From Octopus sinensis (Eukaryota), in the NCBI RefSeq assembly GCF_006345805.1, contig NC_043025.1, positions 3,658,001 through 3,722,000 of the forward strand: 64,000 bases of DNA. The letters run 5' to 3'. Below, in pieces: positions 4,757 to 63,454 of the stretch (within the stretch, counting starts at the first letter, position 1; each line of letters starts with the position of its first letter). The notes below the pieces were generated by a model that ran no database searches, was not told the DNA's origin, and saw only the letters and a program-made list of their open reading frames with translations. The position numbers and the translations under genes are program-made.

Positions 4757-4930
4757 ATTTCTTTACTACCCACAAGGGGGTAAACACAGAGAGGACAAAC
4801 AAGGACAGACAAACGGATTAAGTTGATTATATCGACCCCAGTGCGAAACTGGTACTTTATTTATCGACCGTGAAAGGTAAAGTCGACCTCGGCGGAATTT
4901 GAACACAGAACGTAGCGGCAGACGAAATAC
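4757..4930 (-). mobile_element. tRNA-derived SINE (family B), partial
   Basis: Reverse match to 6076-6310. Confidence 0.85.
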
Positions 4931-9758: not shown

Positions 9759-12104
9759 ATGGATAATGAATTGTGTGGGGAGAAAGTTAAATGTGAGCAA
9801 GAATCAGACAGGGGGGATTTTCCAGATGAGACACCGAAAAATACAGAAGAGCCATCGTTTCCCTGTGAGGTTTGTAACAAGACATTTAATCAGAAACGTA
9901 AACTTACTATACATAAGCGATCCCATGCAGGAGAGAGACCATATCACTGTGATATCTGTGGCAGAACGTTCTCTAAAGCTGGCCACTTGAGCAGACACAA
10001 ATATAGTCATACAGGAGAGAAACCATATCACTGTGATATTTGTGGTAAATCATTTTTTGAAAGAAGTTCTTTAAATAATCATGCGTGTGTCAATGCAGAA
10101 AAGAGATCATATCAGTGTGATATCTGCGGTAAATCATTCTCTACGGCAAGTCATTTAACTACACACAAGCGGACTCACACAGGGGAGAGGCCCTACCCAT
10201 GTGATATCTGTGGCAAAGCGTTCTCTAAAACTAGCCACTTGAGCAGACACAAATATATTCATACAGGAGAGAAGCCGTATGAGTGTGATATCTGTGGTAA
10301 ATTATTTACGGTGATAAGTAATTTGAGTAGGCATAAACGTATTCATACGGGAGAGAAACCACATCACTGTGATATCTGTGGAAAGTCTTTCTCTGAAGGA
10401 AGCAACTTAACCAGACATATACGTATTCATACGGGAGAGAAGCCATATCACTGCGATATCTGTGGTAAATCATTCACCACAGATGGTGACTTAACTCGAC
10501 ACAAACGTATTCATACAGGGGAGAAACCATATCACTGTGATATCTGTGGTAAATCTTACTCTCAGAATTATGACTTAACTGTACACAGACGTATTCATAC
10601 AGGGGAGAAGCCATATCACTGTAATACTTGTGGTAAGGCCTTTACTCAGAATCATGATTTAACTATACACGAACATATTCATACAGGTGAGAAACCATAT
10701 CACTGTGATATCTGTGGTAAGGTGTTCACCGTAGTAAGCAACTTAACCAGACACAAACGCATTCATACAGGCGAGAAACCATATCATTGTGATATCTGTG
10801 GTAAATCGTTCTCTCAGAATTATCAGTTAACTAGCCATATATACGTTCATACAGGAGAGAAACCATATCATTGTGATATCTGTGGTAAATCATACCCTGA
10901 AGGAAGCACCTTAAATAAGCACAGACGTATTCATACAGGTGAGAAACCATATCATTGTGCTATCTGTGGTAAATCATTCTCACAATTAAGTTACTTAACT
11001 CGACACAAATACAGTCACACAGGAGAGAAGCCATATCGCTGTGATATCTGTGGTAAATCTATGTCCTCACTAACCAACCTAACTAACCACAGGCACATTC
11101 ATACAGGAGAAAAACCATATCAGTGTGATATCTGTGGTAAATCTTTTTCCGATGGGAGTCACTTGGCTGGGCACAAACGCATTCATACAGGAGAGAAACC
11201 GTATCCATGTGATATCTGTGGTAAATCATTCTCTGAAAGAAGTAACCTGACTAAACACAAACGTGTTCATACAGGAGAGAAACCACATCAGTGTGATATC
11301 TGTGGTAGATCTTTCTCTCAGAAAATTCACTTAACTACTCACAAATACATGCATACAGGTGAGAAGCCATATCCATGTGATATCTGTGGCAGATCTTTCT
11401 CATCTGGAAGTCACTTAACTAAGCATTATCGTATTCACACAGGAGAAAAACCATATCAGTGTGACATCTGCGGTAAAGCTTTCTCCAGACGCAGTACCTT
11501 GATTTCGCATAAATACATCCATACAGGTGAAAAGCCAAATCACAGTGATAAATCGTCGTCTGTGAGAAATGCCTTAACTGAGTATAAACAAATCCATACA
11601 AGAGAGAAACCGTATCCGTGTGATATCTGTGGTAAATCATTCTCCGCAAGAAGCCATTTGACTATACACAAACGTGTTCACACAGGAGAGAAGCCATATC
11701 ACTGTGATATCTGTGGTAAATCGTTTTCTGTAAGCAACCATTTAACGAAACACAAGCGTATCCATACGGGCGAGAAACCCTATCATTGCGATATCTGTGG
11801 TAAATCATTCTGTGAAGGAAGTAGCTTAACGAAGCACAAGCGTGTTCACACAGGTGAGAAACCATATCACTGTGATATCTGTGGTAAATCTTTCTCACAG
11901 TTATGGCATCTGACTACACACAGACATGTTCACACGGGGGAGAAACCATATCACTGTGATATCTGTGGTAAAGCATTCTCACGCTTGTGGAACTTAACGA
12001 CTCACAAACGTATTCATAGACGAGAGATAGCATATCCTTCTGATGTCCTGGAGGAATCATTCTCCATAAACCAACTTGATGAACAGAACAATCACACTGG
12101 ATAA
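9759..12104 (+). CDS. Poly-C2H2 (Kruppel-type) zinc-finger protein, 781 aa, no KRAB/SCAN/BTB domain visible
   Basis: 27 repeat units of the [28 protein letters not shown] type; 24 canonical, units 3, 21 and 27 degenerate; acceptor-like TTTCAG at 9488 upstream. Confidence 0.97.
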
Positions 12105-13968: not shown

Positions 13969-15305
13969 CAGGGGTCCCAGACAAACAGAATTTTCATTTT
14001 TATTAATACATACATTGTCGCCATTTTATGTTCCTAAATTTTCGCAGTTTGTTTTTGATTTTGTCATCTACACAGCTTTGTAGGGTCAGTTGGGCACTGT
14101 TTGTGAGAAAAGCAGCCTCATGACGCAATTCTCTCTGCCAGAAATTTGGAAACGACATGCTCTACTGCTTGGCATTTACACCGGAAGCTCCAATACGAAC
14201 GTTTCAGTGTGTTTGGGTGTCAATCCGAGGACAATGCAGAGGATTCGGAAAGAGTTGTGTGAGTCCAATGGTGGTTACGAAGGTATGGCGAACTGGCAGA
14301 AACGTTAGCGTACCAGGCGTAATGCTTAGCGGTATTTCGTCTGTCGCTACGTTCTGAGTTCAAATTCCGCCGAGGTCGACTTTGCCTTTCATCCCTTCGG
14401 GGTCGATTAAATAAGTACCAGTTACGCACTGGGGCCGATATAATCGACTTAATCCGTTTGTCCTCTCTGTGTTTAGCCCCTTGTGGGTAGTAAAGAAATA
14501 GGTATTTCGTCTGCTGCTACGTTCTGAGTTCAAATTCCGCCAAGGTCGACTTTGCCTTTCATCCCTTCGGGGTCGATTAAATAAGTACCAGTTACGCACT
14601 GGGGCCGATATAATCGACTTAATCCGTTTGTCCTCTCTGTGTTTAGCCCCTTGTGGGTAGTAAAGAAATAGGTATGGCTGCTCAGAAAACTCACTCTGAT
14701 TGTTCTGATAAGAGAACTCCTGAATTTGTTGGTGAGATCCAGACCCCTCTCTCTCTTTCGGAGAGGCACTGATGATTGACAAATCAAGCAGGTCCTGAGT
14801 TTCTTATCCGGCAGGTAGTGCATGAAGACACTCGATTTACCTCATATAAGATGAGAAAGGGCCAGTTTTTATCCCAAGCCATCAAGGACAAGAGGAAAGA
14901 CCACACTACAAATCTTTTGAGCAAACTCAAGCATATCCAACCATTTATGCTTTGGTTTTTCTCAGATAAGAAAAATTTCTGCCAGGATCTTAATCAAACA
15001 TCCAGTCAACATGATGGTGTTTCGAGTGATCACTAGTGATGGCGATGTTATGCCTCCATTCATCTTCCCACATGGCCGCAGACTCAACATGGAGGCCTAC
15101 ATCAAATGACTGGAGGAGGTACTGCTGGAAGACCCTGTGTCTGACAACAGGACTCTGCACCATGCCACACAAGCAAGAGAACCCAGTTATGGCTGTCAGA
15201 CAATTTCTGCGACCATATCACTTAACATTTGGCCACCTAACTCCCCAGACTGCAACCCCCTTGATTATTATGTGCGGGGTGCAGTTGAGCGAGAGACCAA
15301 CAAAC
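13969..15305 (+). pseudogene. Decayed Tc1/mariner-superfamily transposase (DD37D/maT-like)
   Basis: TA|CAGGGG start; WFFSDKK (D at 14965), QQDSAPCH (D at 15151), WPPNSPDCNPLDY (D at 15263); 109 nt between the last two D codons equals 37 codons with a 2-nt loss; stops, frameshifts and a SINE insertion. Confidence 0.85.
14290..14669 (+). mobile_element. SINE family B dimer (170-bp repeat) inside the transposase
   Basis: TSD AGGTATGGC at 14281-14289 and 14670-14678; internal junction AAATAGG|TATTTCG at about 14501. Confidence 0.9.
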
Positions 15306-16049: not shown

Positions 16050-16885
16050 AAATAATAATGAAATTATTGTATACAGTGCTCAGGTGCACCACAACTTGTC
16101 AGAAAGTGCGTATAAAGTACATGCAGTAATGTAGAAATGTCTGGGAAGCGAACAATGTATGAGTCAGATACATGCTTGTGTGTGTATGGAGGGGAGAAAA
16201 TCAGGTGTAGTGTTGGCGAATCTCTCAGGAAGCATGGAAGTTTTGAAGGATGCAGTGCTCCGACAACTAACAACTGATGCCGGCAGTTTGTTCCATGCTT
16301 CAGCGTGTGTATGGAGGGGAGAAAATCAGGTGTAGTGTTGACGAATCTCAGAAAGCATGGAAGTTTTGAAGGATGCAGTGCTCCGACAACTAACAACTGC
16401 TGATGGCAGTTTGTTCCATGCTTCAGCGTGTGTATGGAGGGGAGAAAATCAGGTGTAGTGTTGACGAATCTCAGAAAGCATGGAAGTTTTGAAGGATGCA
16501 GTGCTCCGACAACTAACAACTGATGCCGGCAGTTTGTTCCATGCTTCAGCGTGTGTATGGAGGGGAGAAAATCAGGTGTAGTGTTGACGAATCTCAGGAA
16601 GCATGGAAGTTTTGAAGGATGCAGTGCTCCGACAACTAACAACTGATGCCGGCAGTTTGTTCCATGCTTCAGTGTGTGTATGGAGGGGAGAAAATCAGGT
16701 GTAGTGTTGGCGAATCTCAGGAAACATGGAAGTTTTGAAGGATGCAGTGCTCCGACAACTAACAACTGATGCCGGCAGTTTGTTCCATGCTTCAGCAACT
16801 CTCAGCGTGAAAAAATGTTTCCTGAAGTCATGGGAGCTGTGCTGTTTTCTGACTTTGTAAACATGTCCAAGGGTGTTCGATGACA
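16050..16885 (-). mobile_element. CR1-group LINE 3' end with a 5 x 123-bp array
   Basis: GHVYKV...RKHFFTLRVAEAWNKLP motif; unit markers at 16183, 16308, 16431, 16554 and 16677; ATT-type tail. Confidence 0.85.
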
Positions 16886-26289: not shown

Positions 26290-26830
26290 AGTGGCACATA
26301 AAAAGCACCATCCGAACGTGGCCGATGCCAGCACCGCCTCGACTGGCTTCTGTGCCAGTGGCACATAGAAAGCACCAACCGATCGTGGCTGATGCCAGAC
26401 CCCTCTGGCACCTGTGGCCGATGCCAGCACCGCCTCGACTGGCTTCTGTGCCGGTGGCACATAAAAAGCACCATCCGAATGTGGCCGATGCCAGCACCGC
26501 CTCGACTGGCTTCTGTGCCGGTGGCACATAAAAAGCACCATCCGAACGTGGCCGATGCCAGCACCGCCTCGACTGGCTTCTGTGCCGGTGGCACATAAAA
26601 AGCACCAACCGATCGTGGCCGATGCCAGACCCCTCTGGCACCTGTGCAGGTGGCACATAAAAAGCACCCACTACACTCGCGGAGTGGTTGGCGTTAGGAA
26701 GGGCATCCAGCTGTAGAAACACTGCCAGATCAGACTGGAGACTGGAGCAGCCCCTGGCTCCCCAGACCCCGGTCGAACCGTCCAACCCGTGCTAGCGCGG
26801 AAAACGGACGTTAAACGATGATGATGATAG
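26290..26830 (+). mobile_element. RTE 3' UTR copy with about 6 internal units
   Basis: GTGGCACATAAAAAGCACC units, GGTTGGCGTTAGGAAGGGCATCC, (GAT)n tail. Confidence 0.9.
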
Positions 26831-28869: not shown

Positions 28870-29402
28870 ATATCATCATCATCATTGTTTAGCGTCCGCT
28901 TTCCATGCTGGCATGGGTTGGACGGTGCAACTGGGGTCTGGGAAGCCAGAAGGCTGCACCAGGCCCAGTCTGATCTGGCAGTGTTTCTACAGCTGGATGC
29001 CCTTCCTAACGCCAACAACTCCGTGAGTGTAGTGGGTGCTTTTTACGTGCCACCCGCACAGGTGCCAGACGAGGCTGGCAAACAGCCATGATCGGATGCT
29101 GCTTTTTATGTGCCACCGGCACGGAGGCCAGATGAGGTTGGCAATGGCCACAATTGGATGGTGCTTTTTACGAGCCACTGGCACGGGGGCCAGATGAGGC
29201 TGGCAAACGGCCACGATCGGATGGTGCTTTTTACGTGCCACCGGCACAGAGGCCAGGCGAGGCTGGCAAACGGCCACGATTGGATGGTGCTTCTTACGTG
29301 CCACCGGCACGGAAGCCAGTCGGGGCGGCGCTGGCAAACGCCCACGATCGGATGGTGCTTTTTACGTGCCACCAGCGCTGGTATCACAGCTACAATTTCC
29401 AT
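28870..29402 (-). mobile_element. RTE 3' UTR copy
   Basis: (CAT)n start, about 5 internal units. Confidence 0.9.
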
Positions 29403-30109: not shown

Positions 30110-33100
30110 ATGGAGAATGACTTCCGAAATTGCCAAAACATTTCCAAAGTTGTGAAGAATATACCTCCAAATTTTACTAGGACTGTGAAGGCATCAAAGT
30201 GTGGCAAGGGTGGTAGTGGCCATCCCAGAGATTCTGCATCTGTTCAGAAGATAGATAAGGTGTCCCCAGTTTCATCGTCTGACCCCCATGTCACCACTGC
30301 TGCTAACAACACTCCTCTGAACAAACAATCAACAGTCTGTGTTGATGAGGCAGTTACTCTTCGAGAGATGCCCTGCGGCAAGGACACAGCATCAGAACAA
30401 CCAGCACTGCACGTAGGCCGTCAGAAGGTTGATATAACAGCCATGACGAATAAAAGCCAGAAAGTATTTGCCAAACTTCCGGGTCTCTCAAACCCGTTGT
30501 TGCAAGGTTTGTCTTCGGGAGACTGCGATAAGACAGGCAAGACCGATATCACTTCCTTGTCGCTTCCGAACAAAGGACAACCGCAGCAGCAAAAATCTCT
30601 CAATTATGATGTTGGTCATGTGTTCGGAGACATGTCTGTTGCACAATCAGGTGGTGCCGAGCCAAATCAGGCTCTAAGTAATACAAGCAGTTCCTCAAAT
30701 AATCTGTTTTTCAGAGCCAGTCACAACACATTACAAGTCTCTGGAGAAATGATAGGGGTTTGTCAGTCGTCGCTCAATACATGCTCAAGTTCATTTGCTG
30801 AAATTTCACACCAAAATGCAAGTGAATCCATTAAGAATAACAATTTTTACGACAATTCTAATACACAGAATGTAAACTGCAAAATGATTTTATCTGGTAC
30901 AGGACGCGAAACTAGCATTCCTGTGACCCGTACCCCCGCTCAACCAGCCGCCAGTGACCAGCCTATTTCTACAGGTGAGAGTCCCAAACCAGATTTGCCG
31001 TCTACATCAAGCCCTTGCCGAACAGAGTCAAACACAAAATCTAACATGGCCATCACCGACCCAGAACGTCTGGCTCTCATCAAACAGAGGAAGAGAGAGC
31101 GTAAGTTCCGTAAACTGCAGTCTTTGTCGGCTCTGATGAGGGCACCAGATGACCGTCACAGCATGGTGCAGCTCAACCCGCTCAGGCATGATCGAATCAC
31201 ACAAGAGAACTTCAAACAAGACAGTGGCAACTACTCCGGCAACTCGACAGGGTCTTCGAGGCTTGGTGACATTACCCAGAACCCTTTTAACTGGATGTCC
31301 TCATCTGTTGGCGCTTCAGCCACTGCGGGGACTGGTATGAACTTTGACAAAAAGCCATGGAGAGCTGACACAGGTAAAAAGACGTGCAGTTTCTTTCACG
31401 AACCTTCAATGCGAAACAACACCGTTTTGAGTGAGAATTTCTCAGAAATGACTAAGAATCGGTCAGATTACAAAACAGAGAAGAAATTGATCGATTCTGG
31501 ATCCAATTCCTGGCAGCTTCATAGCTCTAATAGTTCTGTGGTTGATGATGCATTACGTGTAGCTGCTTTGAAACATATCAAGAATGAGTCACCTTTGGAT
31601 GATCAGTTGCTGCTGTCAGCTTCTGGAAAAGTCTTAGACATTAACAGCAGCAACAAAAGAATTCTTGAGAACTTCCTCACGCCCCGTGTGAAGAAAGAGG
31701 ACAGCGGATCCGAATCAAGCTCATCAGTGTCGTCCGAGGAAGAGAATTGTCTGTCTCCTAAGATAAAAGGGTTAGGTTGCAAAGAAAAAATGTGGGGCAG
31801 CCCCAGTAAAAAGCATCGGCCACAGTCGAAATTTGGTGGCAACATGGTGAAGTTTAAGAATGGGGAAACAGACAGTTCGTCGTTGGATCACTTTCGGTCA
31901 CCACTCGTTAACAACTATCAGAAACGCACAAGAGACCCTGTGGACTACGAGGCGTCTGGAGTACATTCAGACAAGAGTGATAATACGTCGGAAGATGAAA
32001 CAGATAACGAAAGCGATAATAATAATAGTAATGATGATGACACTAGTAATAAGAGCTCTACAGCAAAGTTGTTTGGTAGCACGAAGAGGAAAAGTTATAA
32101 GGGTGGAGTGAAAAGGCGTGGTCGACCCCCTCTCTCTGATAAATTCAAATCTCAGAGCAACAAAACTGTCAAACGAAGGGGTCGACCATCACTGATGAGT
32201 AATTTCGGGAAAGGTGAAGCTCTAACGAAACAGACAAAGCTGGAAAAACCAACTACAATGGAACTGGACACAAAGCCCCAGTTGAAAAGTAAGGATGATA
32301 CTGCTGATAACAAAATCCCAAAGAGAAGGGGTAGGCCTCCGAAAAAAATTACTTACCCAGCTTCGGCCTCGGCCTCTCCTACTCCTATGTCCATTGACAC
32401 TCTCACCCCAGCTGTGGCCCTCTCTTCGCTCAATGCTCCTACCCTGGCCGAAGGCTCAAATTTAGTTGATATTTCCCCTACTTCTCCACCTTCAGAACTT
32501 ACCAGTGAGGAATTGCTGAAGGCCAGGCTAAACCTCCCAAGGCGTCGTGGCCGACCTAGTAAGGTTGATGTAATGTTGCGCGAAATGGCAGCTGCTCACC
32601 TCGCCACGGGACAGCCAGTGGCACTGCCGACGCCCGAGGCAGTGGCAGCCGCACTGGCACAGACTGCTGAAGTGCCGGCAAAGAAGAAGAAAGTAAATGC
32701 CCGTCGTCGTTATCATGCTTACGGACAACGGAAGCGGAGACGTCGGAAGAACACAAATTTGTTGAGGACGTTGTCGACGGTGGCAGCAGAACTTGATGCC
32801 GGGGCAGAGGGTGGGCCGCCGCCATCGGAATTGGCCAGGGGTGAAGAAGGAGCATCTGGGGTGTCGGGTGGTGGCGTCAACTTTCATCAGATGGTACCAG
32901 CACATCAGACGGCATACAATGAGGTGGAAGGAGCTGATGATGATGATGAGGAGGAAGAGGAGGATGAAGAGGGAGAAGACATGGAGCGAAAGGTGGAGGT
33001 ATATAGTGACAGAGGCTCAACTGCAAAGGAGGTGGAGGAGGAGGACAAAGCACTTATCAACAGGCGCCACTTCACTGATCGTCATCATCATCGTCGTCAT

Positions 33101-33140
33101 CATCGACATCATCATCATCAGCTTCAGGAATCCCAAGGTC

Positions 33141-33172
<32 letters not shown>

Positions 33173-35482
33173 AATAGTCATCATCGCCAGCTTCCATTGT
33201 CATCAACATCATCATCATCATCACTGCAAACATTGCCATCATCCGCAAACATTGTAGTTAGTCTGAGTGAGTTGCCCCGTCGTACTGAGCCGGCAGGGGA
33301 GGAGCAGCAGCTGGTGGGGGAACCAAACGCAAAGAAGAGGCAGAAGAAAAGAAAGAAGGATGCTGGTGGAGAGGGGGATGTGAAGAAACAGCGGAGTGGT
33401 GAGGTGGTGAGTGGCACTTCTGTTGGTGGTAGTAGTAGTAGTAATAATAATAATAATAACAACAACAACAGTTTGAAAGAAGTGGTTAAGCAAGAAGAGG
33501 AAGAGGAGGAGGACAGTGTGTTGTTGGCCAACGGGAACACATTCCGGGTGAAGATGATGAAGAGCAAACCGAACAGCAGTGCCAAGGGTCCGGTGTCGGC
33601 ATTTGCCAATTTGAAAGGGCTGAAGAAAGAGGTTCCAGTTGAGCATGGTGGCGAGGAGAACAGGCCAGCTGCTGCCCACACTACAGAAAAGCCCAAATCG
33701 AGGAATAAAAAAACTACCCCATCTTCCTCCTTCTCTTCTAGCTCTACTAAAGCTGGGGTCATCAAAATAAGTCGCAATAGCAACAACAATAATAAAACCA
33801 AAGTCAACAGCAACAACAGTAGTAGTAGTAGTAGTAGTAGTACAAGTACTACTACCACTACCACTACTACTATTACTACTACATCTACGACTCCTGCTAT
33901 TGGCAGTACCGCAAGGCAGATTACGCCACCAGTCTACAATGTGCCACGGGTCATGTTACCACCATGCATTAAGGATCACGGCATTGCATGCCTGATGTGT
34001 GGCCGAGTGCACACTCAGGACCATTTCTTCAAGTACATGGAACTTAAGTCGACGGAGACGTCACATCGATGTCCCCTCTGTGGCCAGTTCTTCTCATGGA
34101 GCTGCCTGTTCATTGAGCACATGCGTGGTCACCCAGAGAACACTGCGCAGTATCGTTGCGAATACTGTGGGTCGGTGTCGCGCAAAATCTCATCATATTT
34201 CAACTGTCGCATAACGCACTGTCCCCCCTCGCAGGAATGGTTCGACCTGCAGAAGGCTTGCGATGACTACCTGGCCAGCCTCGAGAACAAGTCTTCCGCT
34301 GCAGCAGCTAAGAAGCGACGCAAGGCTGCAGCAGCATCCTCATCGACCCCTTCAACAAAGAAAAAAGAATCCGGTGGGGAAGGTGGTGGTGGTGATGGCA
34401 GCAGCAGTGGTGGTGGTGGTGGTCGCAGTAGGAAGAAGCCGTCGGCAAAGCAACAAGAGAAAGACGGGGCTAATGCATCCGTAGAAAAGACGCAGTCCTC
34501 ACAAGCATCGCAGCAAAACACTGCCTCTGAGAGCAGCGGAAATTGTAGCAGTAGTGCCAACAGCAGCAGCAACAACAACAAGCGCAAAGGGCAGAAGCAG
34601 TCTAAAGGACGCAGATCAAGCGCTGACACAAAGACACCAGTAAAACCCACTAAGCCGTTTGTGTGTGATGTTTGTGAGAAGAGCTTCCTGAATTTGAAGC
34701 ATTTTACCAAGCACAAGGAGTCGCACAAAACTGAGACGAACACAAATTGTTGCAAAGACTGCAACAAGCAGTTTTCGAGCCTTGAATATTTAAATGCACA
34801 TAAATGCAGCCACAATACTACAGAAGGGTCTATGCCAGTGACTAATGTGTGTGCAGACAACAACAGTGAGGGCATTAGTGTAGCAGCAGACAACAACAAC
34901 AGTTGCGGCAGTCGCAGTAACTTTAAGTGCAGCCTTTGTGGTGCAGTTTTCTCAGATGCTCTCACCCTCAAAAACCACGTTGATTTATGTGATGGACTTC
35001 CTGACGGCAAGCGTTTGTCGGAGTCGCATAAATGCAGTATCTGCGAGCGTAGCTTCAAGTTCAAGCAGTCGTTGTTAAACCACATGCGGAGGCATACGGG
35101 GGAGCGGCCCTTTGTGTGCGAGTTGTGTGACAAGTCTTTTATGCAGGCTGGCAACCTTGAGCGGCACCGGCGCACCCACGAGCGCGACACCACCGCTCAG
35201 AGCCCGGCCGAGGAGAAGGGCAGCAACAAGCCGTTCACTTGCGAATACTGCGAGAAGGTCTTCACCGTAGAGGCCACCTACCAAATCCACTTGAAGGAGC
35301 ACGATGGCGAGGGCAACGAGCAGTTGCATTGTCCGTATTGCGATGAGCTGTTTGCCTCTCGTCACATGCTGAAGCTACACAAGCGCACACACAACGAACA
35401 CCGGCCGTTCAAGTGCAGTACATGCAGCCGGTGTTACAAGCACAAACATTCACTTGTTGAGCACCAACATAACTGCAGATAA
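30110..35482 (+). CDS. AT-hook and C2H2 zinc-finger protein, at least 1790 aa, in one very long exon
   Basis: Four (K/R)RRGRP AT-hooks at 32111-32557; about 9 C2H2/C2HC fingers in the C-terminal third with a TGERP linker; strong acceptor TTTTTATGCAG at 30077 and the frame is open from 30078, so the N-terminus may extend further. Confidence 0.95.
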
Positions 35483-35750: not shown

Positions 35751-36352
35751 AGAAGGCAAGCTGGCAGAATCGTTAGCACGCTAGGCAAAATGCTTAGCAG
35801 TACTTTGTCTCTCACTGTGTCCTGAGTTCAAATACCGCCAGGTTGACTTTGCCTTTCATCCTTTCCTTTTGGTGGGGTCAATAAATTAAGTACCAGTGAA
35901 ACACTGGGGGGGGGGCAATATAATCGACAAGTCCCCCTCCCCACCAAATTTGAGGCCTTGTGTCTCCAGTAGAAACGATTATTATTATTATAAGCGGGGG
36001 GGGGAGCTGGCAGAATTGTTAGCAGCCAGGTAAAATACTTAGCGGTATTTCGTCTGCCGCTACATTCTGAGTTCAAACTCCACTGGGGTCAACTTGCCTT
36101 TCATCCTTTCAGGGTCGATAAATTAAGTACCAGTGAAACACTGGGTTCGATGTAATTGACTAGTCCCCTCCTACCAAATTCCAGGCCTTGTGCCTTTAGT
36201 AGAAAGTATTATTATTTTTATTATTAGGAGGAGGGCAAGCTGGCAGAGTTGTTAGCACACCTGGCAAAATACTTTTGCAGCGTTTTCTTTGTCCTTACTT
36301 TCTGAGTTCAAACTCTGCCATGGTCAACTTTGCCTTTCATCCTTTCAGTACC
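35750..36352 (+). mobile_element. Cluster of three degenerate SINE B-like copies
   Basis: Repeated GCTGGCAGA...CTGAGTTCAAA...TTGCCTTTCATCCTTTC heads. Confidence 0.75.
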
Positions 36353-37117
36353 TATTTCTTTATTAACCACAAGGGGACAAACAAGGACAGACATAGGTAT
36401 TAAGTCGATTACATCGATCCCAGTGCGTAACTGGTACTTAATTTATCAACCCCGAAAGGATGAAAGGTAAAGTCGACCTCGGCGGAATTTGAACTCACAA
36501 CGTAACGACAGACGAAATACCTTTTTCTTTATTACCCACAAGGGGCTAAACACAGGGGACAAACAAGGACAGACATAGGTATTAAGTCAGTTACATCGAT
36601 CCCAGTGCGTAACTGGTACTTAATTTATCAACCCCGAAAGGATGAAAGGTAAAGTCGACCTCGGCGGAATTTGAACTCACAACGTAACGACAGACGAAAT
36701 ACCTTTTTCTTTATTACCCACAAGGGGCTAAACACAGGGGACAAACAAGGACAGACATAGGTATTAAGTCAGTTACATCGATCCCAGTGCGTAACTGGTA
36801 CTTAATTTATCAACCCCGAAAGGATGAAAGGTAAAGTCGACCTCGGCGGAATTTGAACTCACAACGTAACGACAGACGAAATACCTTTTTCTTTATTACC
36901 CACAAGGGGCTAAACACAGGGGACAAACAAGGACAGACATAGGTATTAAGTCAGTTACATCGATCCCAGTGCGTAACTGGTACTTAATTTATCAACCCCG
37001 AAAGGATGAAAGGTAAAGTCGACCTCAGCAGAATTTGAACTCACAACGTAACGACAGACGAAATACCGCTAAGCATTTTGCCCGGCGTCCTAACAATTCT
37101 GCCAGCTTGCCGCCTTT
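36353..37117 (-). mobile_element. SINE family B tetramer (182-bp period) within one 14-bp TSD
   Basis: Marker at 36481, 36663, 36845 and 37027; TSD ATCCTTTCAGTACC at 36339-36352 and 37118-37131. Confidence 0.9.
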
Positions 37118-37551
37118 ATCCTTTCAGTACCAGTTACACACTGGGGTTGAGCTAATTGACTAGCTGCCTCACCCCAAATTTCAGGCCTTGTGCCTTTAGT
37201 AGAAAGTATTATTATTATTTTCTACTATAGACACAGGGCCTGAAATGTTGGTGGAGGTGGGTAGTTATTTACACTGAATTTGAAATTTACATTCTGAGCT
37301 CAAATGCTGTCGGGGCTGACTTTAACCTTCATCTTTTTGGGGTCAATAAAAAAAATTACCAGTTAAGTACTATGATCAAAGCAATTAACCTCTCCCTTCC
37401 CTCTTGTGTCTGTATTAAAACAACAACAGCAACAATAAATAATGATAATTGTTTATTATTATTATTATTAAGGCTGAGTTGTTAGTACGCCGGATGAAAT
37501 GCTTAGCAGTATTTCGTTGGTCTTTACGTCCTGAGTTCAAATTCCACATCA

Positions 37552-38200
37552 GCGCAGGAGTGGCTGTGTGGTAAGTAGCTTGCTTACCAACCACATGGCT
37601 CCGGGTTCAGTCCCACTGTGTGGCACCTTGGGCAAGTGTCTTCTGCTATAGCCCTGGGCCAACCAATGCCTTGTGAGTGGATTTAGTAGAGGGAAACTGA
37701 AAGAAGCTCATTGTATAGGCGCAGGAGTGGCTGTGTGGTAAGTAGCTTGCTTACCAACCACATGGCTCCGGGTTCAGTCCCACTGTGTGGCACCTTGGGC
37801 AAGTGTCTTCTGCTATAGCCCCAGGTCGACCAATGCCTTGTGAGTGGATTTGGTAGACAGAAACTGAAAGAAGCTTGTCGTATATATGTATGTATATATA
37901 TAAAGTTAATCCAAACAAGAAAGCACAAAAAAACACAACGCGAGGACGTGGAACAAATATAGTATTATTGTATATATAGGTATGTATGTGTATATTTTGT
38001 GTGTCTGTGTTTGTCCCCTTAGCATTGCTTGACAACCGATGCTGGTGTGTTTACATCCCCGTCACTTAGCGGTTCAGCAAAAGAGACCGATAGAATAAGT
38101 ACTGGGCTTACAAAGAATAAGTCCTGGAGTCGATTTGCTCGACTAAAGGCGGTGCTCCAGCATGGCCGTAGTCAAATGACTGAAACAAGTAAAAGAGAGA
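37552..38200 (+). mobile_element. SINE family A with a duplicated head
   Basis: Heads at 37552 and 37718. Confidence 0.88.
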
Positions 38201-44377: not shown

Positions 44378-44756
44378 ATAGTCCAACTGGGGGGAAGGTT
44401 AGCAGTGGGGAAGAAGGGGAGCTGGGTGAAAAGCATTAATACTGGCAGGAGGAGACGGCGGTAGGCTGGTTATTATGGGAGTTGTGAGGTGAATAAAGGA
44501 ATGAGCAGGACTAATTCTGGCCATATCTGATGGTAGAAGGAGTAGGAAAGAGAGCGGGGGTATGAGTTAACTCTAGAATGTGTAGGAAGAGGTGGGGAGC
44601 AGAAGAGTGACGGTTGGATGTAACAAAATTGATTGGTCACTTGCCACATGACCTTAAAACTTTATTTTATTTTTCGTCCCCTTCAACTGACCAACAATGT
44701 TTAATCCAACCAGGACATTGTGTGACAGATGGCCAAGTGAGGGGAGTGTGTGGGCC

Positions 44757-45670
44757 AGCTGAAAAAGAGACAATTTCTACTCTTCTTCTCTGGAAGCCAT
44801 CTACTTGCAATACCAGAGGGAGCACACTCTTCGAGAGGCAGTTGGATGGAACCTACACTCGCCTCCTTATGAGAGCTCAAAATCTCTCGTGGAGGCGCCA
44901 TCCAACCAAAGTACAAATATATGGGAAACTACCACCAGTGTCATCTCTTGTGAAAAGTAGGAGAGTCCAGTTTGCTGGACATTGTTGTAGAGCTGAAAAA
45001 GAGGCAATTTCTACTCTTCTCCTCTGGAAGCCATCTACTCGCGATACCAGAGGGCACACACTCTTCGAGAGGCAGTTGGATGGAACCTACACTCGCCTCC
45101 TTATGAGAGCTCAAAATCTCTCATGGAAGCATCATCCAACCAAAGTACAAATATATGGTAAACTACCACCTGTGTCATCTCTTGTGAAAAGTAGGAGAGT
45201 CCAGTTTGCTGGACATTGTTGTAGAGCTGAAAAAGAGGTAATTTCTACTCTTCTCCTCTGGAAGCCATCTGCTCGCGATACCAGTGGGCGCACACTCTTC
45301 GAGAGGCAGTTGGATGGAACCTACACTTGCCTCCTTATGAGAGCTCAAAATCTCTCGTGGAGGCGCCATCCAACCAAAGTACAAATATATGGGAAAATAC
45401 CACCTGTGTCGTCTCTTGTAAAAGGTAGGAGAGTCCAGTTTGCTGGACATTGTTGTAGAGCTGAAATCGAGGCAATTTCTACTCTTCTCCTCTGGAAGCC
45501 ATCTACTCGCGATACCAGAAGGCACACACTCTTCTACCCTGATGTAATCTCCAGGGATACAGGCATCCAGCAACAGGACCTCCGTAATGCCATGATGGAC
45601 TGTGAAGTCTGGCGTAGCATGATAAATTCCATTGTCTCGACCACGGTCGAACAATGATAATGATGATGAG
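44757..45670 (+). mobile_element. RTE-group-like LINE 3' end with in-frame 234-bp tandem repeats
   Basis: ACACTCTTCGAG at 44824, 45058 and 45292; ORF ends TTVEQ* then (TGA)n. Confidence 0.88.
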
Positions 45671-49501: not shown

Positions 49502-49835
49502 GGTGCAGGAGTGGCTGTGTGGTAAGTAGCTTGTTTACCAACCAAATGATTCCGGGTTCAGTCCCACTGCGTGGCATCTTGGGCAAGTGTCTTCTACTAT
49601 AGCTTCGGGTCGACCAAAGCCTTGTGAGTGGATTTGGTAGACGGAAACTGAAAGAAGCCCGTTGTATATATGTATATGTAGCTGTGTGGTAAGTAGCTTG
49701 TTTACCAACCATATGGTTCCGGGTTCAGTCCCACTGCGTGGCATCTTGGGCAAATGTCTTCTGCTATAGCCTCGGGCCGACCAATGCCTTGTGAGTGGAT
49801 TTGGTAGACGGAAACTGAAAGAAGCCCGTGGTATA

Positions 49836-51689: not shown

Positions 51690-52010
51690 AGTCAGCACGT
51701 CGGACGAAATGCTTAGCGGTATTTTCGTCTGCCGTTACGTTACGAGTTCAAATTCCGCCGAGGTCGACTTTGCCTTTCATCCTTTCGGGGTCGATAAATT
51801 AAGTACCAGTTACGCACTGGTGTCGATGTAATCGACTTAATCCGTTTGTCTGTCCTTGTTTGTCCCCTCTATGTTTAGCCCCTTGTGGGTAGTAAAGAAA
51901 TAGGTATTTCGACTGTCTTTCCGTTCTGAGTTCAAATTCCGCCGAGGTCCACTTTACCTTTTGGGGCCGATAAGTACCAGTTACGCACTGGGGTCGATGT
52001 AATCGATTAG
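51690..52010 (+). mobile_element. SINE family B with a partial second unit
   Basis: Junction AAATAGG|TATTTCG at 51903. Confidence 0.85.
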
Positions 52011-52409: not shown

Positions 52410-53222
52410 AAATCAAAATCGATCAACATCAATGGAAATTGTAGCTGTGATACCAGTGCCGGTGGCATGTAAAAGAGCCATCTGAACGTGGCTGTTGCCA
52501 GCGCCACCCCTACTGGCCTCCGTGCTGGTGGAACGTAAAAAGCACCAATCCGATCGTGGCCGTTGCCAGCCTCGTCTGGCCCCCGTGCCAGTGGCACATA
52601 AAAGCACCATCCGAACATGGCCGTTGCCAGCGCCACCCCTAATTGCCTCCGTGCTGGTGGCACGTAAAAAGCACCAATCCGATCGTGGCCGTTGCCAGCC
52701 TCGTCTGGCACCTGTGCAGGTGGCACGTAAAAAGCACCATCTGATCGTGGCCGTTTGCCAGCCTCGTCTGGCACTGTGCAGGTGGCACGTAAAAAGCACC
52801 ATCCGATCATGGCCGTTTGCCAGCCTCGTCTGGCACCTGTGCTGGTGGCACGTAAAAAGCACCAATCCGATCGTGGCCGTTGCCAGCCTCGTCTGGCACC
52901 TGTGCAGGTGGCACGTAAAAAGCACCATCTGATCGTGGCCGTTTGCCAGCCTCGTCTGGCACCTGTGCAGGTGGCACGTAAAAAGCACCATCCGATCATG
53001 GCCGTTTGCCAGCCTCGTCTGGTACCTGTGCAGGTGGCACGTAAAAAGCACCCACTACACTCACGGAGTGGTTGGCGTTAGGAAGGGCATCCAGCTGTAG
53101 AAACCCTGCCAGATCAGATTGGAGTCTGGTGCATCCATCTGGTTCGCCAGACCTCAGTCAAATTGGCCAACCCATGCTAGCATGGAAAGCGGACATTAAA
53201 CGATGATAATGATGATGATGAT
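52410..53222 (+). mobile_element. RTE 3' UTR copy with about 10 internal 55-62-bp units
   Basis: Repeated GGTGGCACGTAAAAAGCACC..GATCGTGGCCGTT..GCCAGCCTCGTCTGGC. Confidence 0.92.
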
Positions 53223-55312: not shown

Positions 55313-55456
55313 AATACCAAACTCATTCCCTATGGATACCGTATTTATTACAACGAGTGGCTTGTAAACGTATCTAACTCGCTTTCGCTCGTTAGATACG
55401 TTTACAAGCCACTCGTTGTAATAAATACGGTATCCATAGGGAATGAGTTTGGTATT
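55313..55456. repeat. Perfect palindrome, 66-bp arms, 12-nt loop
   Basis: 55313-55378 is the exact reverse complement of 55391-55456. Confidence 0.97.
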
Positions 55457-56568: not shown

Positions 56569-57966
56569 TGCTCGATCTGTAGAAAAGGTGTAGGTAGAAA
56601 CTCTATAAGATGCACCAAGTGTAAGCTATGGACACATAAGAGATGCAGCAATGTCAAAGGAAGGCTAACTAGGAAGATGGTTTTTGTTTGTGGCAGATGC
56701 TCAGGAACAATAAACACTGAAAATGCTCTGAGACCAACTTCCGTCACTTTCCAGGGAGAAAAACTAGAAATAGTTGATAGTTTCCGTTACCTAGGTGACC
56801 AAGTCAGCAGCGGGGGCGGGTGTGCTGAAAGTGTAACTGCTAGAGTAAGAATAGCTTGGGCAAAGTTCAGAGAGCTCTTACCTCTGCTGGTGACAAAAGG
56901 CCTCTCGCACAGAGTGAAAGGCAGACTGTATGATGCGTGTGTACGAACAGCCATGCTACATGGCAGTGAAACATGGGCCGTGACTGCTGAGGATATGCGT
57001 AAGCTCGCTAGAAATGAAGCCAGTATGCTCCGATGGATGTGTAATGCCGGTACTCACACTCGGCAGAGTGTAAGTACCTTGAGAGAAAAGCTGGACCTAA
57101 GAAGCATCAGTTGTGGTGTGCAAGAGAGACGTTTGCGCTGGTATGGTCATGTTGCGAGAATGGATGAAGATAGTTGAGTGAAAAAGTGCCACACCCTAGC
57201 GGTTGAGGGAACCTGTGGAAGAGGCAGACCCAGGAAAACCTGGGACGAGGTGGTGAAGCACGACCTTCGAACTTTAGGTCTCACTGAGGAAATGACTAGA
57301 GACCGAGACCTGGAAGTGTGCTGTGCGCGAGAAGACCCGGCAGGACAAGTGAGTCCACAACCCGTGGCCTTCTACATGGGATGGAGCCAGCCTACGTATG
57401 CATACCTTCCCTTCTTGGGACACAAAACTCTACTTGTGAAGACGTGTTGAGGCAAGTGAGGATCAGAATCGAAATCGATCAATGGAAATTGCGGATGTGC
57501 TACCAGTGCCGGTGGCATGTCGAAACTCTGCTTGTGAAGACCCATTGAGGCAAGTGAGGATCAGAATCGAAATCGATCAATGGAAATCGATCAATGGAAA
57601 TTGCAGATGTGTTACCAGTGCCGGTGGCATGTAAGAGAACTTTCCGTTTCGCGACCGTTGCCAGCACTGCCCCGTTTCGTGTCCGTTGCCAGCCTCGCCT
57701 GGCCCTCGTGCCGGTGGCACATAAAAAGCACCATCCATTCGTGGCCGTTTGCCAGCTCTGTCTGGCACCAGTGCGGGTGGCACGTAAAAAGCACCCACTA
57801 CACTCACGGAGTGGTTGGCGTTAGGAAGGGCATCCAGCCGTAGAAACACTGCCAGATTTGACTGGGCCTGATGAAGCCTTCTGGCTTCACAGACCCCAGT
57901 AGAACCGTCCAACCCATGCTAGCATGGAAAACGGACGCTAAATGATGATGATGATGATGATGATGA
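56569..57966 (+). mobile_element. 5'-truncated RTE-clade LINE (end of ORF2 plus full 3' UTR)
   Basis: Cys-rich CSICRKG..C..C..HKRC insert, FRYLGD, LHGSETW, RRLRWYGHVARM, RGRPRKTW; in-frame TGA at 57175; (GAT)n tail. Confidence 0.92.
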
Positions 57967-60770: not shown

Positions 60771-60904
60771 CGTGTGTAACAAAAGAAAAACAACAAAATC
60801 ACCCTCACTTTTATACTTTTTGCTATCTTGCAAAGGGGGAATGTTATGACGTGGGTGTACATGACTGGTGTAAAATGGTATTCCATAAATCAATAGTTGG
60901 TTGT

Positions 60905-63290
60905 TTTCTTTGTTCCTTCCTGAGACATGCCTGGCTCATAAGGGCCAGTTTCCTGGCTTCCTTGGTGTATAGGTTCCCCACCTGGATGGGACGCCGGTCC
61001 ATCGCAGGTGAACTGCAAGATGCAGGAGGAAAGAGTGAGAGAAAGTTGTGGCGAAACAGTCAGCAGAAGTGTTGCCATTACCTTCTGCCGGACCCATGTG
61101 GAGCTTAGGTGTTTCGCTCATAAACACACACACATCACCCGGTCTGAGATTCGAACCCGCAATCTCTCGACCGCATGTCCACTGTTGTTTGTTCCTTCTC
61201 GAGCCATGCCTGGCTCATAAGGGCCGGTTTCCTTGGCGTATAGGTTCCCCACCTGGACAGGACTCCGGTCCGTCACAGGTGAACTGCAAGATGCAGAAGG
61301 AAAGAGTGAGAGAAAGTTGTGGCGAAACAGTCAGCAGAAGTGTTGCCATTACCTTCTGCTGGACCCACGTGGAGCTTAGGTGTTTCGCTCATAAGTACAC
61401 ACGCATCACCCGGTCTGAGATTCGAACCCGCAATCTCTCGACCGCATGTGACTGTTGTTTGTTTGTTCCTTCTCGAGCCATGCCTGGCTCATAAGGGCCA
61501 GTTTCCTGGCTTCCTTGGCGTATAGGTTCCCCACCTGGATGGGACGCCGGTCCATCGCAGGTGAGCTGCAAGATGCAGGAGGAAAGAGTGAGAGAAAGTT
61601 GTGGTGAAACAGTCAGCAGAAGTGTTGCCATTACCTTCTGCCGGACCCACGTGGAGCTTAGGTGTTTCGCTCATAAGTACACACGCATCACCCGGTCTGA
61701 GATTCGAACCCGCAATCTCTCGACCGCATGTCCACTGTTGTTTGTTTGTTCCTTCTCGAGCCATGCCTGGCTCATAAGGGCCGGTTCTCTTGGTGTATAG
61801 GTTCCCCACCTGGACGGGATGCCGGTCCGTCGCAGGTGAGCTGCAAGTTGCAGGAGGAAAGAGTGAGAGAAAGTTGTGGTGAAACAGTCAGCAGAAGTTC
61901 GCCATTACTTTCTGCCGGAGCCGCGTGAATCTTAGGTGTTTCGCTCATAAACACACACACACATCACCCGGTCTGAGATTCGAACCCGCGATCCCTTGAC
62001 TGTGAGTCTGCTGCTCTAACCACTAGGCCATGTGCCTCCAACAACAGCCTTCACACATCAGGTGTTCTTTCTCAAGCCACGCCTGGCTCATAAGGGCCGG
62101 TTTCCTTGGCGTATAGGTTCCCCACCTGGACGGGACTCCGGCCCGTCACAGGTGAACTGCAAGATGCAGGAGGAAAGAGTGAGAGAAAGTTGTGGCGAAA
62201 GAGTCAGCAGAAGTTCGCCATTACCTTCTGCCGGAGCCACGTGGAGCTTAGGTGTTTCGCTCATAAACACACACATCGCCCGGTCTGAGATTCGAACCCG
62301 CGATCCCTCGACTGTGAGTCTGCTGCTCTAACCACTAGGCCATGTGCCTCCAACAACAGCCTTCACACATCAGGTGTTCTTTCTCAAGCCACGCCTGGCT
62401 CATAAGGGCCGGTTTCCTTGGCGTATAGGTTCCCCACCTGGACGGGACTCCGGCCCGTCACAGGTGAACTGCAAGATGCAGGAGGAAAGAGTGAGAGAAA
62501 GTTGTGGCGAAAGAGTCAGCAGAAGTTCGCCATTACCTTCTGCCGGAGCCACGTGGAGCTTAGGTGTTTCGCTCATAAACACACACATCGCCCGGTCTGA
62601 GATTCGAACCCGCGATCCCTCGACTGTGAGTCTGCTGCTCTAACCACTAGGCCATGTGCCTCCAACAACAGCCTTCACACATCAGGTGTTCCTTCTCAAG
62701 CCATGCCTGGCTTATAAGGGCCGGTTTCCTTGGCGTATAGGTTCCCCACCTGGATAGGACTCCGGTCCGTCACAGGTGAACTGCAAGATGCAGGAGGAAA
62801 GAGTGAGAGAAAGTTGTGGTGAAAGAGTCAGCAGAAGTTCGCCATTACCTTCTGCCGGAGCCGCGTGAATCTTAGGTGTTTCGCTCATAAACACACACAC
62901 ATCACCTGGTCTGAGATTCGAACCCGCGATCCCTCGACTGTGAGTCTGCTGCTCTAACCACTAGGCCATGTGCCTCCAACAACAGCCTTCACACATCAGG
63001 TGTTCTTTCTCAAGCCACGCCTGGCTCATAAGGGCCGGTTTCCTTGGCGTATAGGTTCCCCACCTGGACGGGACTCCGGCCCGTCACAGGTGAACTGCAA
63101 GATGCAGGAGGAAAGAGTGAGAGAAAGTTGTGGCGAAAGAGTCAGCAGAAGTTCGCCATTACCTTCGGCCGGAGGCGCGTGGAGCTTAGGTGTTCCGCTC
63201 ATAAATACACACGTCGCCCGGTCTGAGATTCGAACCCGCGATCCCTCGACTGTGAATCTGCTGCTCTAACCACTAGGCCATGTGCTTCTA
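60905..63290 (-). mobile_element. Tandem array of 8 SINE family C units within one TSD
   Basis: GGTTCCCCACC at 60972, 61243, 61525, 61800, 62116, 62428, 62740 and 63054; flanks CAATAGTYGGTTGT at 60891 and 63291. Confidence 0.92.
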
Positions 63291-63454
63291 CAATAGTCGG
63301 TTGTGGTTATCAAAAAGCAACCCAATGGAGAAATACATGTTGACACAGAACACGCTCTGTACTACTTGAACGTACGTATGATACTCACTATTGACTGTTA
63401 AACAAGCACAGTTGAACTAACATCGTAAACTACTCTCCGGAGTATATATATATA

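What the first reader, a model, noticed from the sequence alone, without database searches (positions are those of the whole stretch)
60891..63304. Eight-unit SINE concatemer inside one target-site duplication, with a linker foreign to this locus
Seen: the 2.4-kb array is bounded by CAATAGTTGGTTGT (60891-60904) and CAATAGTCGGTTGT (63291-63304), a single CpG-type mismatch. It has two unit types. Five units have full tRNA heads (periods 316, 312, 312, 314) and are joined by a linker AACAACAGCCTTCACACATCAGGT that occurs in neither flank. Three units have heads truncated at CAGTGGAC and fused to the previous tail (periods 271, 282, 275). Established: TPRT insertions are bounded by one TSD. Inference: at least a linker-bearing dimer was assembled elsewhere and inserted as a block, implying read-through or circular/multimeric SINE RNA as the mobile unit. 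Some later local expansion is likely, since the units at 62032 and 62344 look identical.
Basis: partly seen in the sequence, partly recalled or inferred. Interest (0 to 1): 0.78.

Follow-up and report, generated by a model that had tools for sequence, protein, structure and literature searches.

The report
Octopus SINE tandem array, one insertion site
A short retrotransposon (SINE) in the Octopus sinensis genome sits as eight head-to-tail copies inside a single insertion scar; this is a real but largely ordinary kind of SINE array, and only the origin of a 24-base spacer between some copies remains unexplained.

Summary
A 2,386-bp array of eight SINE units (sense strand = minus) lies between CAATAGTTGGTTGT and CAATAGTCGGTTGT. 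Four exact copies of a 24-nt linker occur only inside the array. Five units have full heads and three have 5'-truncated heads.

The linker is absent from an Octopus vulgaris monomer of the same family, which has its own TSD. It is also absent from the array's own normal tails and shows no significant similarity to the flanks or the SINE.

It is also not required.
- SINE arrays inside one TSD are already described in bivalves.
- The same window holds two more such arrays from another SINE family, with a third locus sharing their tail-to-truncated-head junction.
- Non-LTR reverse transcriptases are shown experimentally to make head-to-tail tandem insertions by template jumping, including jumps onto 'extra' RNAs.
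- No hammerhead ribozyme is present, so the retrozyme/circular-RNA route has no support.
- Mosaic units and two identical units show later unequal crossing-over and gene conversion.

Best reading: a locally built, TPRT-linked concatemer. Interest is low to moderate.

The parts
63291..63304 (-). 5' copy of the target-site duplication (sense: ACAACCGACTATTG), directly upstream of the U1 head
62978..63290 (-). U1: full-head unit (head AGAAGCACATGG..., two G>A changes), tail cut at GAAC and followed by the linker (62978-63001)
62664..62977 (-). U2: full-head unit plus linker (62664-62687). Mosaic: 5' half like U5, 3' half like U1/U3/U4
62352..62663 (-). U3: full-head unit plus linker (62352-62375), 100% identical to U4
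62040..62351 (-). U4: full-head unit plus linker (62040-62063)
61738..62039 (-). U5: full-head unit preceded by a linker but ending in the normal tail GGAACAAACAAACAA
61456..61737 (-). U6t: unit lacking head nt 1-26 (no A box), joined directly to the U5 tail (…ACAA|CAGTGGAC)
61185..61455 (-). U7t: 5'-truncated unit (junction …ACAA|CAGTCAC). Carries a patch (alignment columns 203-268) of the U1-U4 type, which indicates gene conversion
60905..61184 (-). U8t: 5'-truncated unit with the terminal tail GGAACAAAGAAA abutting the 3' TSD
60891..60904 (-). 3' copy of the target-site duplication (sense: ACAACCAACTATTG). It begins with ACAA, which is microhomology to the SINE tail
36332..37131 (-). Comparator: array of a second SINE family (one full unit plus three units truncated at GGTATTTCG) inside one 20/21-nt TSD, GGTACTGAAAGGAT(A/GA)AAGGC
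14281..14678 (+). Comparator: same second family, one full unit plus one unit truncated at the same GGTATTTCG, inside the TSD AGGTATGGC
51705..52006 (+). Comparator: third locus with the same tail|GGTATTTCG junction

Best explanation
The array marks one insertion site of an ordinary LINE-dependent, tRNA-like SINE in Octopus sinensis (CM016887.1, about 3,718,891-3,721,304). It was built into an array at this locus rather than imported as a ready-made multimer.

Proposed sequence of events (inferred):
1. The partner LINE's reverse transcriptase primed on a nicked target whose end pairs with the SINE's ACAA-repeat tail. The TSD begins with ACAA.
2. A proto-array formed, either during that same event by serial template jumps or in closely following re-insertions into the tail. 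It consisted of a full unit, a 24-nt filler, a second full unit with a normal tail, and then 5'-truncated unit(s).
3. The tail-to-truncated-head junction arose when cDNA synthesis stopped at head position about 27 and resumed on the 3' end of another SINE RNA.
4. The linker junction arose when a full-length cDNA reached the RNA 5' end and picked up 24 nt from an unrelated template or as filler. Synthesis then continued on another SINE RNA that ended at ...GAAC(A).
5. Unequal crossing-over and gene conversion between the tandem units later raised the count to eight and made the units mosaic.

Shown: the single TSD, the two junction types, the coincidence of the junctions with RNA ends, the foreignness of the linker, the mosaicism, and the recurrence of such arrays in this genome.

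Inferred: that the junctions were made by reverse transcriptase, and at this locus.
For: 1. Single 14-bp TSD, 13/14 identical.
2. Junction boundaries coincide with SINE RNA ends. Each truncated unit follows a complete ACAA tail. Each linker is followed by SINE nt 1, as judged against the O. vulgaris monomer with its own TSD. Random DNA duplication would not place breakpoints there.
3. The same architecture recurs for a different SINE family in this window. Two arrays sit inside their own single TSDs. Three independent loci share the identical junction AAAGAAATA|GGTATTTCG. Units are 97.6-100% identical within a locus, apart from one terminal unit at about 90%, and about 83% identical between loci. 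The TSDs start with (A)GGT, which matches the truncation point.
4. Experimental precedent: R2 proteins doing TPRT jump from full-length or truncated cDNA to new RNA 3' ends. They yield head-to-tail tandem insertions and junctions carrying 'extra template' RNA (PMC11371274).
5. TSD1-(SINE)n-TSD1 arrays are documented in bivalves (PMC11481361).
6. Local remodelling is evident. U3 = U4. U2 and U7t are mosaics. F-type units are 93.5-100% identical to each other and T-type units 93.6-96%.
7. The three unit lineages (U1-4, U5, U6-8) are 88-93% identical to each other. That is no closer than each is to an independent O. vulgaris copy (88-90%). They therefore date from about the time of insertion or came from separate RNAs, not from recent DNA duplication.
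Against: - The source of the 24-nt linker was not found. It has no significant match to the SINE, to the flanks or to the rest of the window.
- Two jumps are needed to make the linker junction, which is a rare event.
- The microhomology at this family's truncated junction is only about 2 nt (CA), weaker than the 4 nt seen in the comparator family.
- DNA-level slippage at the ACAA microsatellite could also produce the truncated-unit junction.
- Nothing here excludes the linker-bearing dimer existing elsewhere in the genome, because octopus genomes could not be searched.
- Heavy gene conversion blurs the unit phylogeny.
Confidence: 0.5

Rival explanations
1. A dimer (or longer multimer) joined by the 24-nt spacer was assembled at another locus, for example from two SINEs inserted 24 bp apart or from an array whose spacer is that locus's TSD. 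Pol III read through it and it was retrotransposed here as a block. It then expanded locally.
For: - The linker is foreign to this locus and absent from monomer ends.
- Each linker is followed by a precise SINE 5' end.
- There is no TTTT terminator on the sense strand anywhere in the array, so read-through is possible.
- U1-U5 keep their A and B boxes.
- The unit pattern fits a minimal ancestral A-linker-B dimer, with later units being B-5'/A-3' hybrids.
- Dimeric SINEs are a known class (PMC13023118, listed; PMC4758252).
Against: - It needs the same rare junction-forming event plus an extra retrotransposition.
- No second copy of the linker was seen in 64 kb of O. sinensis or 20 kb of O. vulgaris. 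A protein-space search for linker-spanning ORFs gave 2 hits, neither carrying the linker. This is weak evidence because the sample is tiny.
- The truncated units lack three head substitutions that U1 and U5 share. They are therefore not simple later copies of the dimer's 3' monomer, unless gene conversion is invoked.
Confidence: 0.2
2. Purely DNA-level origin. A single monomer inserted, and both junction types arose later by replication slippage or unequal exchange. The linker is non-homologous filler DNA. Unequal crossing-over followed.
For: - Tandem duplication of TE-derived units is rampant in this window: 14 arrays with a period of 100-300 bp.
- Bivalve TSD1-(SINE)n-TSD1 arrays, and unequal recombination as the proposed cause.
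- The ACAA microsatellite tail could promote slippage.
- U3 = U4 shows that DNA-level duplication does occur here.
Against: - The linker junction begins exactly at SINE nt 1, and the truncated junction follows a complete tail. Breakpoints that coincide with RNA termini are not expected from random duplication.
- No template for the filler exists within 60 kb upstream or 0.7 kb downstream.
- The comparator family uses one identical junction at three loci.
- The unit lineages are as divergent as independent copies.
Confidence: 0.2
3. Retrozyme-like element. Tandem units are transcribed, self-cleaved and circularised, then copied by rolling-circle reverse transcription. This is the 'circular SINE RNA' version.
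For: Tandem units of about 300 bp inside a TSD superficially resemble metazoan non-LTR retrozymes (PMC7229834).
Against: - No hammerhead or other ribozyme match in Rfam at E<=1 over 55-64 kb, or at E<=10 over one head-plus-junction segment (62250-62360).
- No CUGANGA core on either strand.
- GC is 54%, not under 45-50%.
- The units are Pol III SINEs with A and B boxes.
- Two different junction types and diverged units do not fit rolling-circle copying of one circle.
Confidence: 0.03
4. Assembly artefact. The array, or part of it, is an artificial expansion in the PacBio/Hi-C assembly.
For: U3 and U4 are identical over 312 bp, linker included.
Against: The other six units differ from each other by 3-12% and carry distinct indels and junctions. 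Misassembly does not create that. At most one unit (U3 or U4) is in doubt.
Confidence: 0.04

Closest known systems
TSD1-(SINE)n-TSD1 tandem SINE arrays of bivalves (Scapharca broughtonii; Mob DNA 2024, PMC11481361)
   Same: A mollusc tRNA-related SINE. One TSD pair bounds the whole array. The first unit has a complete head, the following units are truncated at one and the same head position, and the last unit has a complete tail. U5-U8 here match this.
   Different: In the bivalve arrays the internal units also have truncated tails. Here the internal tails are complete. The bivalve description has no spacer of foreign sequence.
TSD1-(SINE-TSD1)n arrays / Alu target-site triplication (unequal recombination between TSDs)
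   Same: Full-length units with tails cut at one position, separated by one constant short spacer. U1-U5 look like this.
   Different: The spacer should be the local TSD. Here the spacer ACCTGATGTGTGAAGGCTGTTGTT is unrelated to the local TSD ACAACCGACTATTG. It would fit only if the array had formed at another locus.
Template jumping by non-LTR reverse transcriptases during TPRT (R2; PMC11371274; also Bibillo & Eickbush 2002/2004, from my own knowledge)
   Same: It produces head-to-tail tandem copies in one insertion. Junctions run from full-length or truncated cDNA to the 3' end of another template. Some junctions carry a piece of an unrelated RNA.
   Different: It has been shown for R2 proteins in vitro and in human cells, not for an octopus LINE/SINE pair. 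The partner LINE of this SINE was not identified (one search found no LINE sharing the 3' region in the window).
Dimeric/multimeric SINE families (Alu and others)
   Same: Two Pol III-type monomers joined by a short linker and moved as one RNA.
   Different: Membership needs the same dimer at many loci with different TSDs, and that was not testable here. This locus has 8 units of two junction types, not a fixed dimer.
SINE-derived satellites of squamates (PMC10702118)
   Same: Tandem repeats derived from SINE parts, proposed to start with a local duplication or with repeated insertion at one locus.
   Different: Those are long arrays at several loci that are approaching concerted evolution. 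This is a single 8-unit array still bounded by its TSD.
Metazoan non-LTR retrozymes (PMC7229834)
   Same: Tandem units of 150-450 bp, sometimes with TSDs.
   Different: They require a hammerhead ribozyme in each unit and have low GC. Neither holds here.

Membership tests
LINE-dependent tRNA-like SINE | Internal Pol III promoter (A box TRGCNNAGTGG, B box GGTTCGANNCC) | tested here: met
   A box TGGCCTAGTGG is perfect in U1-U5 and absent in U6t-U8t. B box GGTTCGAATCT is 10/11 in all eight units.
LINE-dependent tRNA-like SINE | Head recognisable as tRNA-derived | tested here: inconclusive
   ARAGORN finds no tRNA in the window. Rfam finds no tRNA hit even at E<=10 on the head alone. Only the box motifs and their spacing are tRNA-like.
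LINE-dependent tRNA-like SINE | Dispersed copies, each with its own variable-length TSD and a short-repeat 3' tail | tested here: met
   O. vulgaris copy L001 9892-10180 has the TSD ATCTAGAAATAC and the tail GGAACAAAC. The array itself has a 14-bp TSD and ACAA-repeat tails. More distant copies lie at 27999, 55769 and 58146.
LINE-dependent tRNA-like SINE | Partner LINE sharing the 3' end | not testable with these tools
   No other match to unit positions 186-289 in the window. No octopus genome search is available.
TSD1-(SINE)n-TSD1 array (bivalve type) | One TSD pair around the whole array; first unit with full head; later units truncated at one head position; last unit with full tail | tested here: met
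   (U5-U8t; whole array inside one TSD).
TSD1-(SINE)n-TSD1 array (bivalve type) | Internal units also truncated in the 3' tail | tested here: not met
   U5, U6t and U7t end in the complete GGAACAAAC(AA)n tail before the next truncated head.
TSD1-(SINE-TSD1)n array (TSD-mediated unequal recombination) | Spacer between units is the local TSD | tested here: not met
   The linker differs from the TSD, and there is no significant similarity to either flank.
Mobile dimeric/multimeric SINE family | The same linker-joined multimer at multiple loci with different TSDs | not testable with these tools
   The linker is absent elsewhere in the 64-kb window. The only good family match in the 20-kb O. vulgaris locus is a monomer without the linker. 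Metagenome and prokaryote collections gave 0 hits but hold no octopus DNA. Protein-space searches were uninformative.
Mobile dimeric/multimeric SINE family | No Pol III terminator between monomers, so one transcript can span them | tested here: met
   No TTTT on the sense strand inside the array. The first one lies about 16 nt beyond the 3' TSD.
Metazoan non-LTR retrozyme | Type I hammerhead ribozyme in each repeat | tested here: not met
   No Rfam ribozyme hit. No CUGANGA on either strand.
Metazoan non-LTR retrozyme | Low GC (<45-50%) | tested here: not met
   Array GC is 54.1%, against 42.5% for the window.
SINE-derived satellite | Long homogenised arrays at several loci | tested here: not met
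   Eight units at one locus, 88-100% identical, still bounded by a TSD. Other loci were not testable.

The most novel reading that the evidence does not exclude
Octopus SINEs are routinely concatenated by their partner reverse transcriptase at the moment of insertion. The jumps would be position-specific and guided by microhomology, going from an internal pause site or from the RNA 5' end to the 3' end of another SINE RNA. This would be the seeding step for the many SINE-derived tandem arrays in cephalopod genomes. Alternatively, or in addition, the linker-bearing dimer is itself a transcribed, mobile multimeric SINE generated by Pol III read-through.
Probability: 0.25. Interest if true: 0.55.

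Novelty: new member of a known kind. Interest (0 to 1): 0.3.

Why it matters
How interspersed repeats turn into tandem repeats and satellites is still argued, mostly in terms of unequal recombination. SINEs are about 11.6% of the closely related O. vulgaris genome (PMC13282606). This 64-kb window alone holds 14 TE-derived arrays with a period of 100-300 bp.

Suppose a genome-wide census showed that array junctions sit at SINE RNA termini and recur at the same position in independent loci, as three loci of a second family do here. That would point to reverse-transcriptase template switching as the seeding step. It would also supply a natural data set on the template-jumping behaviour of a non-R2 LINE.

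If instead the linker-bearing dimer turns up at many loci, it documents the birth of a dimeric SINE. As a single locus, the array has no evident functional consequence.

Tried and rejected
1. Genome-wide search for the linker. This was not possible. Exact scans of metagenome contigs and genome contigs gave 0 hits. Those collections hold no octopus DNA. A conserved SINE 21-mer hit one unrelated contig by chance.
2. Protein-space back door.
   - The linker-spanning 99-aa ORF found only an O. vulgaris hypothetical protein and a Logan ORF. These yielded monomers without the linker.
   - The neighbouring RT-fragment ORF is not on record. Its homologues include no ortholog with a usable contig. The orthologous locus in O. 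vulgaris or O. bimaculoides therefore could not be fetched.
   - The nearest annotated gene (the 1,790-aa zinc-finger ORF) is 25 kb away, beyond the 10-kb flank limit.
3. Linker derived from the SINE, its antisense strand, or either flank. Local alignment scores are no better than those of shuffled linkers. A 7/9 resemblance of the linker's last bases to the TSD's end needs a 1-nt shift and has p of about 0.01-0.04 by my own estimate. I treat it as low-complexity TTGT similarity.
4. Linker is the local TSD (TSD-mediated unequal recombination): rejected.
5. Retrozyme or hammerhead: rejected.
6. Invariance of the four linkers as a sign of selection or youth: unremarkable. 31% of 24-nt windows are invariant among U1-U4.
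7. Clean unit phylogeny to date the junctions: defeated by mosaicism and gene conversion.
Full report
**Source and orientation.** The window is Octopus sinensis chromosome CM016887.1 (GCA_006345805.1), positions 3,658,001-3,722,000. The 1,790-aa zinc-finger ORF at 30110-35482 is an exact match to a called gene there. The SINE in the finding reads in sense on the minus strand, so 'head' ends lie at the right of each unit in window coordinates.

**Check of the observation.**
- With array ends fixed to within 5 nt, a 13/14 match has a probability of about 2e-5. The empirical rate for 14-mers 2.4 kb apart in this window is 1.5e-5. The target-site duplication is real.
- The 24-nt linker occurs four times exactly and nowhere else in 64 kb, even with three mismatches.
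- I resolved eight units. U1-U4 are 313, 314, 312 and 312 nt. Each consists of a full head, a body, a tail cut at ...GAGAAAGAAC, and the linker.
- U5 (302 nt) has a full head and the normal tail GGAACAAACAAACAA.
- U6t, U7t and U8t (282, 271, 280 nt) lack the first 26 nt of the head and follow the previous tail directly.
- U3 and U4 are identical.
- The heads have a perfect A box and a 10/11 B box, but no tRNA model recognises them.

**Is the linker part of the monomer?**
- A linker-spanning ORF search led to an Octopus vulgaris locus, L001.
- That locus carries a solitary copy of the same family, 86.5% identical over unit positions 1-289.
- The copy starts at GGAGGCACATGG and ends ...CTCGAGAAGGAACAAAC. 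It is flanked by its own 12-bp TSD, ATCTAGAAATAC.
- A more distant Logan copy ends GAACAAACAACACC.
- U5-U8t end the same way. The normal element therefore has no linker.
- The linker junction consists of a slightly shortened tail, 24 foreign nucleotides, and then exactly SINE nucleotide 1.
- Local alignment of the linker against the SINE (both strands) and 200 nt of each flank scores no better than shuffled linkers. The best exact matches elsewhere in the window are two 11-mers.

**What the units say about history.**
- Identity is 93.5-100% within U1-U4 and 93.6-96% within U6t-U8t.
- Identity is only 88-93% between the U1-4, U5 and U6-8 lineages. Each is about as far from the independent O. 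vulgaris copy, at 88-90%. The three lineages therefore go back to about the time of insertion, or they came from separate RNAs.
- Informative sites are strongly mosaic. U2 is U5-like in columns 75-163 and U1/3/4-like after column 203.
- U7t is U6t-like in its 5' half but carries a U1-4-type patch in columns 203-268.
- U1-U5 share three head CpG changes that the truncated units lack, while U5 shares body changes with the truncated units.
- This is the signature of repeated unequal crossing-over and gene conversion in a tandem array.
- The minimal ancestral state compatible with the pattern is A-linker-B-tail-T, with A like U1/3/4, B like U5 and T a truncated unit. All later linker-flanked units are B-5'/A-3' hybrids.

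**Context in the same window.**
- Tandem Repeats Finder lists 14 TE-derived arrays with a period of 100-300 bp.
- A second SINE family shows the same architecture. At 36332-37131 one full unit plus three units truncated at GGTATTTCG lie inside one 20/21-nt TSD.
- At 14281-14678 one full unit plus one unit truncated at the same point lie inside the TSD AGGTATGGC.
- A third locus, 51705-52006, has the same junction. A solitary copy at 4757-4930 begins at that point.
- Units are 97.6-100% identical within a locus, apart from one terminal unit at about 90%, and about 83% identical between loci. The junction therefore formed independently at each locus.
- In that family most TSDs begin with (A)GGT. 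This is the same microhomology as at the truncation point GGTA.
- The pattern is what one expects if a cDNA end ...TACC-3' can re-prime on the 3' end of a fresh SINE RNA, as the nicked target did.
- A third family forms head-to-tail dimers at three loci with different junctions and only about 90-95% unit identity. These look like re-insertions into (TA)n tails.

**Mechanism.**
- Two of the array's breakpoints coincide with SINE RNA termini. The truncated units follow complete tails, and the linker is followed by nucleotide 1. That favours events that involve SINE RNA ends over random DNA duplication.
- Experimental work with R2 proteins shows jumps from full-length or truncated cDNA onto new RNA 3' ends. 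It also shows head-to-tail tandem insertions in cells and 5' junctions carrying a piece of an unrelated RNA (PMC11371274).
- Bivalve SINEs are already reported as TSD1-(SINE)n-TSD1 and TSD1-(SINE-TSD1)n multimers (PMC11481361). SINE-derived satellites are reported in squamates (PMC10702118).
- My best reading is therefore a concatemer built at this site by TPRT-linked events. These were either template jumps within one insertion or re-insertion into the ACAA tail with a 24-nt 5' filler. Unequal crossing-over followed.
- I give this reading 0.5. The broader statement 'built locally, not imported as a multimer' gets about 0.7.

- A pre-assembled linker-bearing dimer, read through by Pol III and inserted as a block, remains possible at about 0.2.
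- The sense strand has no TTTT anywhere in the array, and U1-U5 keep their promoters.
- It needs the same rare junction-forming event elsewhere plus one more retrotransposition. Its key prediction, the same junction at other loci with other TSDs, could not be tested.
- No tool here searches octopus genomes, and every substitute route came back empty or uninformative.
- The circular-RNA variant is effectively excluded. There is no hammerhead or other ribozyme hit and no CUGANGA core. GC is 54%. The diverged units with two junction types do not fit rolling-circle copying.
- An assembly artefact can concern at most the identical U3/U4 pair. The other units differ by 3-12% and carry distinct indels.

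**Verdict.** The conclusion that a multimeric or circular RNA is the mobile unit is not established and is not the most economical reading. The structure is a new example of a known kind of SINE array. Its unexplained remainder is the origin of 24 nucleotides, which one genome-wide BLAST would settle.

Noticed in passing
window 36332-37131 (minus), 14281-14678 (plus), 51705-52006 (plus), 4757-4930 (minus): A second SINE family (head GGCGAGCTGGCAGAAACGTTAGC...) forms arrays with the identical junction AAAGAAATA|GGTATTTCG at three independent loci. Two of these arrays lie inside their own single TSDs. One solitary copy is truncated at the same point. Most TSDs of this family start with (A)GGT, matching the truncation point. 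This suggests microhomology-guided template switching or re-priming.
   Followed up: partly
window 8820-9135, 37553-37884, 49505-49835: A CORE/MIR-like SINE family (…GGTTCCGGGTTCAGTCCCACTGCGTGGCACCTTGGGCAAGTG…) occurs as head-to-tail dimers at three loci. The junctions differ and unit identity is only about 90-95%, which looks like re-insertion into (TA)n tails rather than duplication.
   Followed up: partly
window 5505-5661, 26318-26668, 29035-29373, 52452-53052, 57676-57795: Another abundant repeat carries a variable internal 63-bp tandem block (GGTGCTTTTTACGTGCCACCGGCAC...) of about 2 to 8.4 copies, VNTR-like, at five loci.
   Followed up: no
window 30110-35482 (+) and 9759-12104 (+): Two long intron-less ORFs: a 1,790-aa protein with C-terminal C2H2 zinc fingers and long low-complexity runs (annotated in GCA_006345805.1), and a 781-aa C2H2 zinc-finger array made of 84-bp repeats.
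   Followed up: partly
window 55328-55439: A near-perfect palindromic hairpin of about 80-110 nt gives sub-threshold hits to several unrelated miRNA precursor models on both strands (best 45.7 bits against a gathering score of 84). It is probably a MITE-like inverted repeat, not a conserved miRNA.
   Followed up: no
window 3870-4632, 6660-7608, 16180-16796, 44757-45534: Further high-identity (93-98%) tandem arrays with periods of 108, 246, 123 and 234 bp. The 234-bp array lies inside a LINE-like ORF (44614-45657) and repeats a protein segment.
   Followed up: no
L001 10001-10387 (O. vulgaris OX597840.1): An annotated 128-aa 'hypothetical predicted protein' of O. vulgaris starts inside the antisense strand of a SINE copy. 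It is very likely an annotation artefact.
   Followed up: partly
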